This document shows, piece by piece, positions 33,950 to 36,080 of a stretch of DNA of 45,008 nt (position 1 is its first letter; each line of letters opens with the position of its first letter). The position numbers and the translations under genes are program-made. Origin of the DNA: Octopus bimaculoides (taxonomy: Eukaryota). The stretch spans positions 6,336,845-6,381,852 of the forward strand of contig NC_069009.1 in assembly GCF_001194135.2 (NCBI RefSeq), written 5' to 3'. The notes under the pieces were generated by a model. That model had not been told where the DNA came from. It saw only the letters and a list, made by a program, of their open reading frames with translations, and made no database searches.

Positions 33950-36080
33950 TGGCAACAAAAGGGTTAAAGTGATCTAAATTAAAACCTAAAATTTCACGTT
34001 CATTTATGTTTCCAAACATCAGATTAATAATGACAAACTTTTATCAGTAATTCCTTCATTATTTTCAAAACTCATTGCAACAAAGGCAGTGCATCTGAAC
34101 AGAAAATGGTAATAAAAGGAGTGAACCCTTTTGATACCAATGTGTCTGAAACTGGTACTGGTTCTGTGATACAAATTCAATATTTTAAAGTGATTTATGC
34201 TAAAAGCTTCCGTTACAATTTCATGTTAATTTATGTTTCAGCTTAATAATGACAAAGTTATTTTACTTTTTTCAGCTTAATAATAACAAAGTTATTTTTC
34301 AAAATTTATTGAAACAAAGGCAGGAATTTTATAACAAAAAGGTTAAACTGATCCAAGTAAACCTGATACCAAAAGTGTTCCAGATATCAGCTTAACAATG
34401 ACAAGGTTATTTTATAAAATCTTTCATTATATTCAAAACTAATTGAAACAGCATATATGAATAGAAATATGGTTACAAAGGAGTTAAAGTGATCTAAATT
34501 AAATCCTTCCATCAAAATTTTATGTTAATAATAAAGGCAAAGTAATATTTCTAAATTCTTTATTATTTTTACAAATTTATTGAAATAAAATCAATGTATT
34601 TCAACAGAAATATGAGAACAAAACGGTTAAACTGATCCAAATAAACCTGCCATCAAAATTTTATGCTAATTTATGTTCCAGACACTAGTTTAATGATAAA
34701 TTTATTTCATAAAATTCTTCATTATATTCCAAACTAATTGAAACAAAGACAGTGCATTTGAATTGAAATATGGTAAGAATAGTGGTAAAGTGATCTGAAT
34801 GAAATCCTTCCATCAAAATTTCATGTTAATAATGGCAAAGTAATTTTTCTAAATTCTTTAATGGTAAAGTAATTTTTCTAAATTCTTTATTGCTTTTACA
34901 AATTTATTGAAACAAAAGCAGTGCATTTCGACAGAAATAGGGGAACAAAAGGGTTAAAGTGATCTTAGAAACTTCTATCGAAATTTTATGTTAACTTATG
35001 TTCCAAACACTAGCTTAATAATGACAAAGTTCTTTTACTAAGAATTTTTCAAAATTCATTGAAACAAAAGCAGTAGATTTCAACAGAAATGTATGAACGA
35101 AAAGGGTTGACCCTTGTCTGAAACTGGCACTGGTTCTGTGATACAAATTCAATATTTTAAAGGGATTCATGCTAAGAGCTTCCATTAAAATTTCATGTTA
35201 ATCTATGTTCTAATTAAATAATGATAAAGTAATTTTACTAAATATTTAATATATTTAAACAGTGTATTTCAATAGAAATATAACAAAATGGTTAAACTGA
35301 TCCAAATAAACCTACCATCAAAATTCCATGTTAACCCATGTTCCAAACACCAGTTTAATAATGACAAAGTTATTTTATAATTTTCTTCATTATATTTATA
35401 ATGAATCAAAGCAGAAACAGTACATTTGATTAGAAATATGGTGACCAAGGGGTTAAAGTGATCTAAATTAATGCCTTCCATCAAAATTTCATGTTCATAA
35501 ATGACAAAGTAATTTTTCTAAATTCTTTCTGATTTTCAAAATTTATTGAAACAAAGACAGTGCATTTCAACAGAAATATATGAACAAAAAGAGTTAAAGT
35601 GATCTTAGAAACCTCCATCAAAACCTCATGTTAGCTTATGTTCCAAGTATCAGCTTAATGATTACAAAGTCCTTTTACTAAATTCTTCCTTATTTTTAGA
35701 ATTTATTAAAACAAAGCCAGTGTATTTAAGCAGAAATATGGTAACAAAAGGGGTTAAATATATCTAAATTAAAACCTGCCATCAAAATTTTAGCTCTATT
35801 TATGTTCCAGACATCAGCTTAATAATGATAAAATTATTGTACAAATTTCTTCATTAAATTCCAAACTATTTGAAACAAAGACAGGGCATTTGAATTGAAA
35901 TATGGTAAGAAAGGGGTTAAAATGATCTAAATTAAATCCCTCCATCAAAACTTTATGTTAATTTATGTTCCAAAACACCAAATTAATAATGACACAGTTC
36001 ATTTACTAAATTCTTCATTATGTTAAAACTTAATTGAAACAAAGGCAGTGCTTTTTAGCAGAAATATGGCAACAAAAGAG
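33950..36080 (+). repeat. ~161-bp tandem array (~13 units) built from a piggyBac-like MITE; locus 2
   Basis: Units end TGGTAACAAAAGGG-TTAA. Left-end modules (T)GAA-CCCTTTTGATACCA lie at 34126 and TTGA-CCCTT at 35111. Terminal inverted match is 13/14. Confidence 0.9.

What the first reader, a model, noticed from the sequence alone, without database searches (positions are those of the whole stretch)
33950..36080. piggyBac-like MITE turning into a satellite: units delimited by the element's own TTAA sites
Each ~161-bp unit ends TGGTAACAAAAGGG-TTAA, the reverse complement of a left-end module CCCTTTTGATACCA seen at 34126. The left module (~60 bp) runs to an internal TTAA-AGTGAT (34185), which is exactly where each tandem unit starts. 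The monomer element is therefore L + TTAA + R (~220 bp), and the satellite unit is TTAA + R. Twice (34118-34128, 35104-35113) a right end is fused to a left end across one shared TTAA-like tetramer (GGG-TTGA-CCC), as expected from insertion into the element's own TSD or from a circle junction. R modules greatly outnumber L modules, so simple self-insertion is not enough and R was amplified separately. CCC/GGG ends with TTAA are established piggyBac hallmarks. The transposase-assisted or rolling-circle origin is inference.
Basis: partly seen in the sequence, partly recalled or inferred. Interest (0 to 1): 0.7.

Follow-up and report, generated by a model that had tools for sequence, protein, structure and literature searches.

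The report
Old piggyBac MITE-derived tandem array
This 2.1-kb stretch is an old tandem array built from the right-hand two-thirds of a 222-bp piggyBac-type miniature transposon that is present in about ten thousand copies in this animal genome; it shows clearly how a transposon's own TTAA target sites can seed a repeat array, but the kind of thing is already known.

Summary
Window 33961-36078 has 13 tandem units. Each runs from a TTAA to the motif TGGTAACAAAAGGG, and two units also carry a ~60-bp left module.

Genome searches show that the monomer is a real 222-bp MITE:
- Its inverted ends are CCCTTTTGATACCA and TGGTAACAAAAGGG, and it makes TTAA target-site duplications.
- About 7,200 left ends and 7,700 right ends match at 2 mismatches or fewer.
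- Both ends are homologous to a resident 2.5-2.7-kb piggyBac family that carries a PF13843 transposase.

The array junction GGG|TTAA|AGTGATC is the same at every array locus sampled. It occurs 964 times genome-wide. That is 25-100 times more often than junctions at other internal TTAAs, and far more than its reciprocal L-to-L junction (16).

One locus (L043) preserves the likely intermediate, a copy inserted into the internal TTAA of another copy.

My model has three steps, none shown directly: nested insertion, spread of L-(R)n multimers, and local unequal exchange.

- R exceeds L only inside arrays, not genome-wide.
- The two R-to-L junctions are probably one duplicated event.
- Units within an array are no more alike than copies at different loci, so the arrays are old and not homogenising. 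Rolling-circle origin has no support.

It is a new member of a known kind.

The parts
33728..33775 (+). Weak partial R-like remnant (about consensus 62-105), upstream of an interrupting repeat. It suggests the array once extended further left.
   Evidence: Family D15 (72-74% to unit starts over 39 nt). Relaxed nhmmer hit to consensus 79-105, E = 0.02. Both signals are weak.
33776..33950 (+). Fragment of an unrelated dispersed (SINE-like) repeat that interrupts the left edge of the array. It is not part of the MITE.
   Evidence: blastn finds 30 further hits (77-95% identity) elsewhere in the window and in 12 other fetched loci.
33961..34119 (+). Unit 1: R module (consensus 57-221).
   Evidence: nhmmer map.
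34118..34128 (+). First R-to-L junction, degenerate: AGG-AGTGAA-CCC.
   Evidence: Sequence; junction table.
34126..34188 (+). Left module 1: left inverted end CCCTTTTGATACCA through to the internal TTAA (34185-34188).
   Evidence: Homologous to the left end of solo copies.
34126..35102 (+). Block 1: L plus six R units (u2-u7, starting at 34126, 34345, 34483, 34627, 34783 and 34954).
   Evidence: nhmmer map; junctions ..AAAAGGG|TTAA|AGTGATC.
35104..35113 (+). Second R-to-L junction: GGG-TTGA-CCC, right end and left end sharing one TTAA-derived tetramer.
   Evidence: Sequence.
35111..35160 (+). Left module 2. It carries a 13-nt deletion that removes most of the inverted end. Its internal TTAA is at 35157-35160.
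   Evidence: A 125-nt repeat, 89% identical to the region of module 1, lies 972 bp away (D12).
35111..36080 (+). Block 2: L plus six R units (u8-u13, starting at 35116, 35292, 35451, 35594, 35757 and 35915). It ends in the right inverted end TGGCAACAAAAGAG (36067-36080), followed by CTCA instead of TTAA.
844..1651 (+). Second, independent array of the same family in the window: TTAA (844-847), a degenerate L, then R, R, a partial R that starts at the internal TTAA of consensus 101, R, and a truncated R.

Best explanation
The region is an old, now static tandem array made from a non-autonomous piggyBac element (MITE).

The monomer is TTAA-[L, 59 bp]-TTAA-[R, 159 bp]-TTAA, 222 bp between the target-site duplications. 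Its imperfect 14-bp inverted ends are CCCTTTTGATACCA and TGGTAACAAAAGGG. Both ends, and nearly all of R, derive from the termini of a resident 2.5-2.7-kb piggyBac family with a DDE_Tnp_1_7 transposase.

The array unit is TTAA plus R. The unit junction, right end GGG | TTAA | base 64 of the element, is exactly what forms on the right side when one copy inserts into the internal TTAA (positions 60-63) of another copy. The product is L-TTAA-[L-TTAA-R]-TTAA-R.

Proposed sequence of events:
1. Such a nested insertion occurs. This is shown to happen.
2. An element with one L and two or more R arises from it. This could happen by the transposase pairing the inner left end with the outer right end, or by loss of one L through recombination. 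This step is inferred.
3. L-(R)n multimers, which keep both termini, spread to many loci while the family is active. This is inferred from the over-representation of the junction and from TTAA-flanked composites.
4. R number changes locally by unequal exchange or block duplication. In this window, an L-(R)6 block is present twice. There is partial support for this step.

Nothing has kept the units alike since. The array has simply decayed.
For: Monomer and target-site duplication:
- Solo copies have TTAA on both sides, and the consensus is 222 bp.
- The consensus search gives 5,957 candidates, and all 40 scored are full-length at 87-92% identity.
- There are 7,197 left and 7,670 right termini at 2 mismatches or fewer, against 4-5 for reversed-pattern controls.
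- L043 shows host L[2-63]-TTAA-insert[1-222]-TTAA-host R[60-220]. The uninterrupted family consensus serves as the empty site, so the TTAA duplication is demonstrated.

Autonomous relatives:
- PF13843 hits lie at L035, L039, L040 and L042 (E 1e-61 to 1e-68), inside elements bounded by TTAA-CCCTTTYGTTACTWAGCCGGCCG and GGTCAGAAATATAGTAACGAAAGGG-TTAA.
- The last ~150 bp of these elements align with R (nhmmer consensus 95-222).
- There are 223 such left ends. The major variant is 18/23 identical to the MITE left end.

Junction phase:
- About 20 of the 22 junctions in which a right end meets internal element sequence, at about 10 independent loci, read ..AAAAGGG|TTAA|AGTGATC. The other two lie at other internal TTAAs, consensus 101 and 125.
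- The junction is found 964 times genome-wide (control 9), with more than 100 exact matches.
- Right-end junctions at the other internal TTAAs have 4 and 1 exact matches.
- The reciprocal L-to-L junction is found 16 times.

Arrays as bounded elements: arrays start with TTAA-L and end with R-TTAA at L012, L021 and L024.

Timing: within-array identity equals between-locus identity (77.2% against 77.1%). Window units are 74.7% alike pairwise and 78% like solo copies.

Local duplication:
- Unit pairs stand out at 87-92% identity (u2-u8, u4-u6-u10, u5-u12).
- L027 units pair in an alternating pattern on the tree.
- Both R-to-L junctions of the window share the same xTGA change.
Against: - No L-to-L junction lies upstream of any of the ~10 sampled arrays. 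Either L was lost or the inner left end was used every time. The founding R-R junction could equally have arisen once by TTAA microhomology slippage.
- Use of inner-left with outer-right ends predicts equally many L-L-R elements. These are about 60 times rarer in raw counts. The difference in pattern sensitivity (48% against 11% in my sample) explains only about four-fold of this.
- Exact R-to-R junctions are clustered regionally and often share a strand. Examples are C1 4.27-5.89 Mb and C8 0.12-9.63 Mb, all on the minus strand. Segmental duplication, not transposition, may therefore account for part of the spread.
- The tree of R units is star-like and cannot show position-specific lineages.
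- The right flank of the window array reads CTCA, not TTAA, and its left edge is lost.
Confidence: 0.6

Rival explanations
1. Microhomology origin without nesting. The first R duplication arose by replication slippage, or by misaligned gap repair after excision, between the internal TTAA and the flanking TTAA of a single copy. Everything afterwards is unequal exchange, plus spread of that variant.
For: The two sites share the 4-bp TTAA. No L-L signature lies upstream of the sampled arrays. Microhomology-driven expansion inside MITEs is the mechanism proposed for Xenopus miDNA4, as reviewed in PMC12628747. Replication slippage was proposed for coral CMITE arrays.
Against: The element has five internal TTAAs and many other AT-rich microhomologies, yet more than 95% of tail-to-internal junctions use position 60. 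That pattern fits a single founder equally well under either model, so it does not decide between them. A nested-insertion intermediate with exactly this junction does exist (L043). No slippage intermediate can be identified.
Confidence: 0.25
2. Purely local origin at each locus. Every array grew independently, after a monomer inserted, by recurrent tandem duplication. No multimer ever transposed.
For: Some units within arrays are each other's closest relatives (window u4-u6-u10, u5-u12; L021; L027).
Against: The same base-exact junction would have to be re-created at hundreds of loci, while junctions at other internal TTAAs stay at background level. Within-array identity is no higher than between-locus identity.
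Confidence: 0.08
3. Rolling-circle or extrachromosomal-circle amplification. Under this idea the GGG-TTAA-CCC junction is a circle junction, and the arrays are re-integrated concatemers.
For: Head-to-tail junctions with one shared TTAA exist, in the window at 35104-35113 and at about 30 places genome-wide. L027 holds four full-length units in tandem.
Against: Full-element head-to-tail junctions are about 30 times rarer than R-to-R junctions. They are what double insertion at a regenerated TTAA produces (PMC5932611). The two junctions in the window look like one event. It is established knowledge that piggyBac excises through hairpinned linear ends, not circles. An R-only circle has no known route.
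Confidence: 0.04
4. A satellite-carrying rolling-circle element (non-autonomous Helentron), as in bivalve molluscs, mistaken for a MITE.
For: Molluscan 'MITEs with ~160-bp core repeats' were later reassigned to Helentrons (PMC7492417, listed).
Against: The element has symmetrical inverted ends and a demonstrated TTAA duplication. Both ends are homologous to elements that encode a piggyBac transposase.
Confidence: 0.01

Closest known systems
Xenopus Xstir / T2-MITE (Hikosaka & Kawahara 2004, as cited in PMC2872659 and reviewed in PMC12628747)
   Same: A TTAA-targeting MITE that exists in three forms: a monomer MITE, a tandem array of part of its internal sequence, and a MITE-plus-array composite.
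   Different: T2-MITEs are now assigned to Kolobok (PMC6004289), not piggyBac. The mechanism proposed there is stem-loop excision between neighbouring copies. Here the unit includes the element's right terminus and its TTAA, and a nested-insertion intermediate is seen.
Coral CMITE tandem arrays (Wang et al. 2010, PMC2872659)
   Same: piggyBac-related MITEs with TTAA targets that form tandem arrays.
   Different: The CMITE arrays consist of full-size elements, with similar spacers between them, and were attributed to replication slippage. Here the unit is a terminal two-thirds of the element, cut at its own TTAA sites.
Double-insertion tandem dimers as satellite seeds (McGurk & Barbash 2018, PMC5932611)
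   Same: Head-to-tail dimers keep one target-site copy in the junction. The window's GGG-TTGA-CCC junction fits this. That paper also notes that tail-to-internal tandem junctions can come from nested insertions, and that dimers later expand by unequal exchange.
   Different: That work covers young, polymorphic Drosophila insertions of full elements. Here one particular tail-to-internal junction of a MITE became 25-100 times over-represented and dispersed across the genome.
Bivalve satellite-like repeats carried by non-autonomous Helentrons (PMC7492417)
   Same: A mollusc genome with short arrays of ~160-bp units, dispersed and associated with mobile elements.
   Different: The transposon class and mechanism differ. 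This element has inverted ends, a TTAA duplication and piggyBac partners.

Membership tests
piggyBac-derived MITE | TTAA target-site duplication | tested here: met
   L043 has a full copy inserted at the internal TTAA of another copy, with TTAA on both sides. The family consensus is the empty site. Most solo copies have TTAA on both flanks, as do composites.
piggyBac-derived MITE | Terminal inverted repeats beginning CCC and ending GGG | tested here: met
   CCCTTTTGATACCA and TGGTAACAAAAGGG match at 13 of 14 positions. The termini are found 7,197 and 7,670 times.
piggyBac-derived MITE | Short, non-coding and high in copy number | tested here: met
   The consensus is 222 bp and AT-rich. The search gives 5,957 first-look candidates. 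The one ORF of 70 aa or more that touches the array (35269-35484, minus strand, 71 aa, TTG start) looks like a chance frame.
piggyBac-derived MITE | Termini shared with an autonomous element that encodes a piggyBac (DDE_Tnp_1_7) transposase | tested here: met
   PF13843 matches lie inside TTAA-bounded 2.5-2.7-kb elements (L035, L040; also L039, L042). Their right ~150 bp are homologous to R, and their left end is 18/23 identical. All sampled transposase copies contain stop codons.
piggyBac-derived MITE | Mobilisation by that transposase, with precise excision | not testable with these tools
   This needs an excision or transposition assay, or polymorphism data.
Satellite DNA | Head-to-tail tandem arrangement of a monomer | tested here: met
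   There are 13 consecutive units.
Satellite DNA | Long arrays of hundreds of units or more | tested here: not met
   The longest array seen has 13 units, and the other sampled loci have 2-5.
Satellite DNA | Concerted evolution, with units in an array more alike than units in different arrays | tested here: not met
   Within-locus identity is 77.2% and between-locus identity 77.1%. Window units are 74.7% alike pairwise and 78.0% like solo copies. Only two shared derived columns were found.
Non-autonomous Helentron carrying satellite repeats | Rolling-circle termini with no target-site duplication, and a Rep/helicase partner | tested here: not met
   The element has symmetrical inverted ends, a TTAA duplication and piggyBac partners.
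Kolobok T2-MITE (Xstir type) | TTAA duplication together with Kolobok-type termini and partner | tested here: not met
   The TTAA duplication is shared, but the partner elements encode PF13843 piggyBac transposase, with homologous ends.
Double-insertion tandem dimer | One target-site copy kept between the tail of one full element and the head of the next | tested here: met
   GGG-TTGA-CCC at 35104-35113. There are 39 pattern hits genome-wide, about 30 after removing palindromic tail-to-tail hits.

The most novel reading that the evidence does not exclude
Alternative end pairing on self-nested piggyBac MITEs (inner left end with outer right end) produced a mobile L-(R)n multimer lineage. That lineage seeded hundreds of dispersed arrays, all with the same base-exact phase. 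If so, a cut-and-paste transposase directly and repeatedly manufactures satellite seeds whose unit borders are its own target sites.
Probability: 0.35. Interest if true: 0.55.

Novelty: new member of a known kind. Interest (0 to 1): 0.38.

Why it matters
How dispersed transposons turn into tandem arrays is usually reconstructed from end products. This family keeps all the stages in one genome:
- the autonomous piggyBac;
- about ten thousand monomer MITEs;
- an intact self-nested intermediate;
- L-R-R composites;
- arrays of up to 13 units;
- a duplicated L-(R)6 block.

The junction is base-exact, so the stages can be counted. That makes two ideas testable here: that target-site regeneration and self-nesting seed arrays, and that multimers can themselves transpose.

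For annotation, the ~165-bp 'satellite' in this genome should be masked as part of a piggyBac MITE family. It should not be treated as an independent satellite or as a centromere candidate.

Tried and rejected
- **Regular higher-order repeat in the window array.** Mean identity by lag is flat at 79-83%. Only some pairs stand out, so the array is not a clean 6-unit higher-order repeat, although its layout is R + [L+6R] + [L+6R].
- **Tree of 57 R units, to separate local duplication from multimer transposition.** The tree is star-like and gives too little signal.
- **Unbiased sample of 20 R-to-R junction loci.** Array-size statistics therefore rest on about 10 loci that were found through unit similarity.
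- **Empty-site test through a MITE inserted in a SINE copy (L016).** The site in the SINE consensus is ambiguous. I used nested family copies as the empty-site control instead (L043).
- **Rfam scan and ORF scan of 32-38 kb.** The Rfam scan found nothing. The ORF scan listed only nine short frames of 71-152 aa, which I did not follow up.
- **Literature search for a prior description of this octopus-type family or array.** None was found. Octopus repeat papers only tabulate piggyBac.
- **Helentron reading.** Rejected on termini and target-site duplication.
- **Control junction patterns at 2 mismatches or fewer.** These are dominated by chance AT-rich flanks, so I compared only the exact and 1-mismatch classes.

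Full report
**1. What is in the window**

The window is G000:C29:6336845-6381852 of a 2.34-Gb assembly with about 30 chromosome-sized sequences. It is AT-rich and full of microsatellites and dispersed short repeats. I take it to be an animal genome, and its repeat content reminds me of an octopus. That identification is my inference and nothing below depends on it.

Across 33961-36078, nhmmer against the family consensus finds 13 consecutive units. TRF and the repeat finder see the same array. Units end ..ATATGGTAACAAAAGGG. The next unit starts TTAA-AGTGATC.

Two units also carry a ~60-bp left module. The first is at 34126-34188 and the second at 35111-35160. Each starts CCC.. and ends at an internal TTAA (34185-34188 and 35157-35160).

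The layout is R | L+6R | L+6R. The second R-to-L junction reads GGG-TTGA-CCC (35104-35113). The first is degenerate: AGG-AGTGAA-CCC.

A weak partial R-like remnant at about 33728-33775 is cut off from unit 1 by a 175-bp piece of an unrelated dispersed repeat. The array ends in the right inverted end at 36067-36080, followed by CTCA rather than TTAA.

A second, independent array of the same family lies at 844-1651.

**2. The monomer is a real MITE**

A single unit finds 2,313 first-look candidates on all chromosomes. Twelve single-unit loci aligned with their flanks show a common element. It starts TTAA-CCCTTTTGATACCAAC.. and ends ..ATATGGTAACAAAAGGG-TTAA. The consensus is 222 bp.

Searching with that consensus gives 5,957 candidates. 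All 40 that were scored are full-length copies at 87-92% identity.

Pattern counts at 2 mismatches or fewer (reversed-pattern control in brackets):

| Pattern | Count | Control |
|---|---|---|
| Left terminus | 7,197 | 4 |
| Right terminus | 7,670 | 5 |

In my small, array-biased sample these patterns detect only 30-46% of real ends. The family therefore has on the order of 10,000-20,000 copies.

Genome-wide, L and R are nearly balanced. R exceeds L only inside arrays.

**3. It is piggyBac**

The genome has many PF13843 (DDE_Tnp_1_7) matches: 118 scored out of 1,355 candidates.

Four of the twelve loci fetched (L035, L039, L040, L042) have at least one matching terminus, TTAA-CCCTTTYGTTACTWAGCCGGCCG.. 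or ..GGTCAGAAATATAGTAACGAAAGGG-TTAA. L035 (2,665 bp) and L040 (2,549 bp) are bounded by both.

The last ~150 bp of these elements are plainly homologous to R (nhmmer hits to consensus 95-222).

The autonomous-type left end occurs 223 times (control 0). Its major variant, CCCTTTCGTTACTAACCCGGCCG, matches the MITE left end at 18 of 23 positions. A MITE subfamily seen in L045 is intermediate between the two.

All sampled transposase copies carry stop codons.

TTAA duplication is also made by Kolobok elements, so the transposase-bearing relatives are what settle the superfamily.

**4. Target-site duplication and self-nesting**

L043 (C1:73086400-73087150) reads host L[2-63]-TTAA-insert[1-222]-TTAA-host R[60-220]. 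Thousands of uninterrupted copies have a single TTAA at that position. This is therefore a clean demonstration of TTAA duplication on insertion.

It also shows that insertion into the internal TTAA creates the array-type junction GGG|TTAA|AGTGATC.

Other nested cases:
- L044 is a second, truncated case.
- L021 holds a copy nested at another internal TTAA, consensus 125-128.
- L035 is an autonomous-type copy nested in an internal TTAA of another such copy.

**5. The junction phase is genome-wide and strongly over-represented**

At about 10 independent loci, R-to-R junctions are always right end + TTAA + consensus 64.

Genome-wide counts at 2 mismatches or fewer:

| Junction | Count | Control | Exact matches |
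|---|---|---|---|
| R-to-R at consensus 60 | 964 | 9 | more than 100 |
| Reciprocal L-to-L | 16 | 0 | 1 |
| Full-element R-to-L | 39 (about 30 without palindromic tail-to-tail hits) | 0 | 0 |
| Right end + TTAA + consensus 129 | 165 | 11 | 4 |
| Right end + TTAA + consensus 105 | 93 | 21 | 1 |

The totals in the last two rows are mostly chance AT-rich flanks.

So nesting at any one internal TTAA yields a handful of junctions. The R-to-60 junction stands 25-100 times above that level. Independent nested insertions cannot account for it. The junction must have been copied after it arose.

**6. How it was copied**

Sampled composites begin TTAA-L and end R-TTAA (L012, L021, L024). They therefore keep both termini and should be mobilisable.

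In a nested L-L-R-R, pairing the inner left end with the outer right end would move exactly an L-R-R element. That is my preferred route, and it is inferred. The alternatives are loss of one L by recombination, or a founding TTAA-microhomology slippage.

Local change in R number has partial support:
- A few unit pairs within the window array are 87-92% alike, against a mean of 80%.
- Units in L027 and L021 pair up on the tree.
- The two L-bearing units are each other's best match (87%; 89% over 125 nt).
- Both R-to-L junctions share the same TTAA-to-xTGA change. They are most simply one event duplicated with its ~975-bp block.

Segmental duplication probably also contributes. Exact junction hits cluster regionally and by strand: C1 4.27-5.89 Mb and C8 0.12-9.63 Mb are all on the minus strand, and C16 holds 30 of the first 100 listed.

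**7. Age and dynamics**

| Comparison | Identity |
|---|---|
| Window units to consensus | 84% |
| Window units to each other | 74.7% |
| Window units to solo copies elsewhere | 78.0% |
| Other arrays, within locus | 77.2% |
| Other arrays, between loci | 77.1% |

Only two columns show a shared derived state.

The arrays therefore formed at about the time the family was active and have not been homogenised since. They are fossils, not a satellite in the making. The longest array seen has 13 units.

**8. Comparison with what is known**

MITE-to-array transitions are well documented:
- Xenopus Xstir, a TTAA-target MITE, exists as monomer, array and composite (cited).
- Coral CMITEs, which are piggyBac-related, form arrays of full-size elements.
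- Xenopus miDNA4 is a further example.
- McGurk and Barbash described double-insertion dimers with the target site in the junction. They noted explicitly that tail-to-internal tandem junctions can come from nested insertions.
- Mollusc 'MITEs with ~160-bp repeats' turned out to be Helentrons. That reading fails here on termini, target-site duplication and partner elements.

Octopus repeat surveys list piggyBac but do not describe this family or its arrays.

**9. Verdict**

The thing itself is a new, unusually legible member of a known kind.

The descriptive part is secure (about 0.95). The specific route, nested insertion then mobile multimers then local exchange, is the best-supported model, but I put it only at about 0.5-0.6.

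Noticed in passing
window 844-1651: A second array of the same MITE family, about 33 kb upstream: a degenerate L plus five R units. One junction joins a right end to the internal TTAA at consensus 101 instead of 60.
   Followed up: partly
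window 33776-33950 (also 20557-20661, 36763-36860, 10668-10741, 23855-24074): Pieces of a very common dispersed SINE-like repeat. One piece interrupts the left edge of the array. The same family occurs in many of the fetched loci.
   Followed up: partly
G000:C1:197269404-197269674: Eight exact copies of the MITE's left terminus (TTAACCCTTTTGATACCAACC), seven of them spaced 33 bp apart and one 52 bp. This is a minisatellite built from the transposon's left end.
   Followed up: no
G000:C16:22272583, C21:35408746, C27:7672990, C27:12456046: Palindromic junctions in which two right ends face each other across one TTAA (..AAAAGGGTTAACCCTTTTGTT..). These are tail-to-tail double insertions or inverted nesting.
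   Followed up: no
G000:C1 4.27-5.89 Mb; C8 0.12-9.63 Mb; C16 24-57 Mb: Exact R-to-R junction matches are regionally clustered and often all on one strand. Exact left termini are spread evenly along C1. This suggests segmental or tandem duplication of blocks that contain L-R-R copies.
   Followed up: no
L045 (G000:C1:2208300-2208900); same spacing at C1:3953719, C1:5507588 and C1:197327391: A related MITE subfamily has a left end (CCTTTCGTTACCAACCCGGCTGAAACC) intermediate between the autonomous element and the main MITE. Two copies sit 23 bp apart in tandem, and this arrangement recurs at four places on C1.
   Followed up: partly
L035 (G000:C9:32293423-32297469): An autonomous-type piggyBac copy inserted into an internal TTAA, about 250 bp from the right end, of another copy of the same family. 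It therefore shows two right ends 246 bp apart.
   Followed up: yes
L014 and L028 (G000:C26:10112800-10122799 and 10081500-10091499): Nearly identical L-R-R copies with identical flanks, in opposite orientation and about 30 kb apart. This is an inverted segmental duplication that carries the composite.
   Followed up: no
window 13448-15825 and 22086-23319: Kilobase-scale GTG/GTA-rich minisatellite blocks with strong GC skew. Periods are 3 to 99 bp.
   Followed up: no
window 41105-41237 and 41864-42150: A perfect 68-bp tandem duplication and a 148-bp two-copy tandem repeat, both within other dispersed repeats.
   Followed up: no
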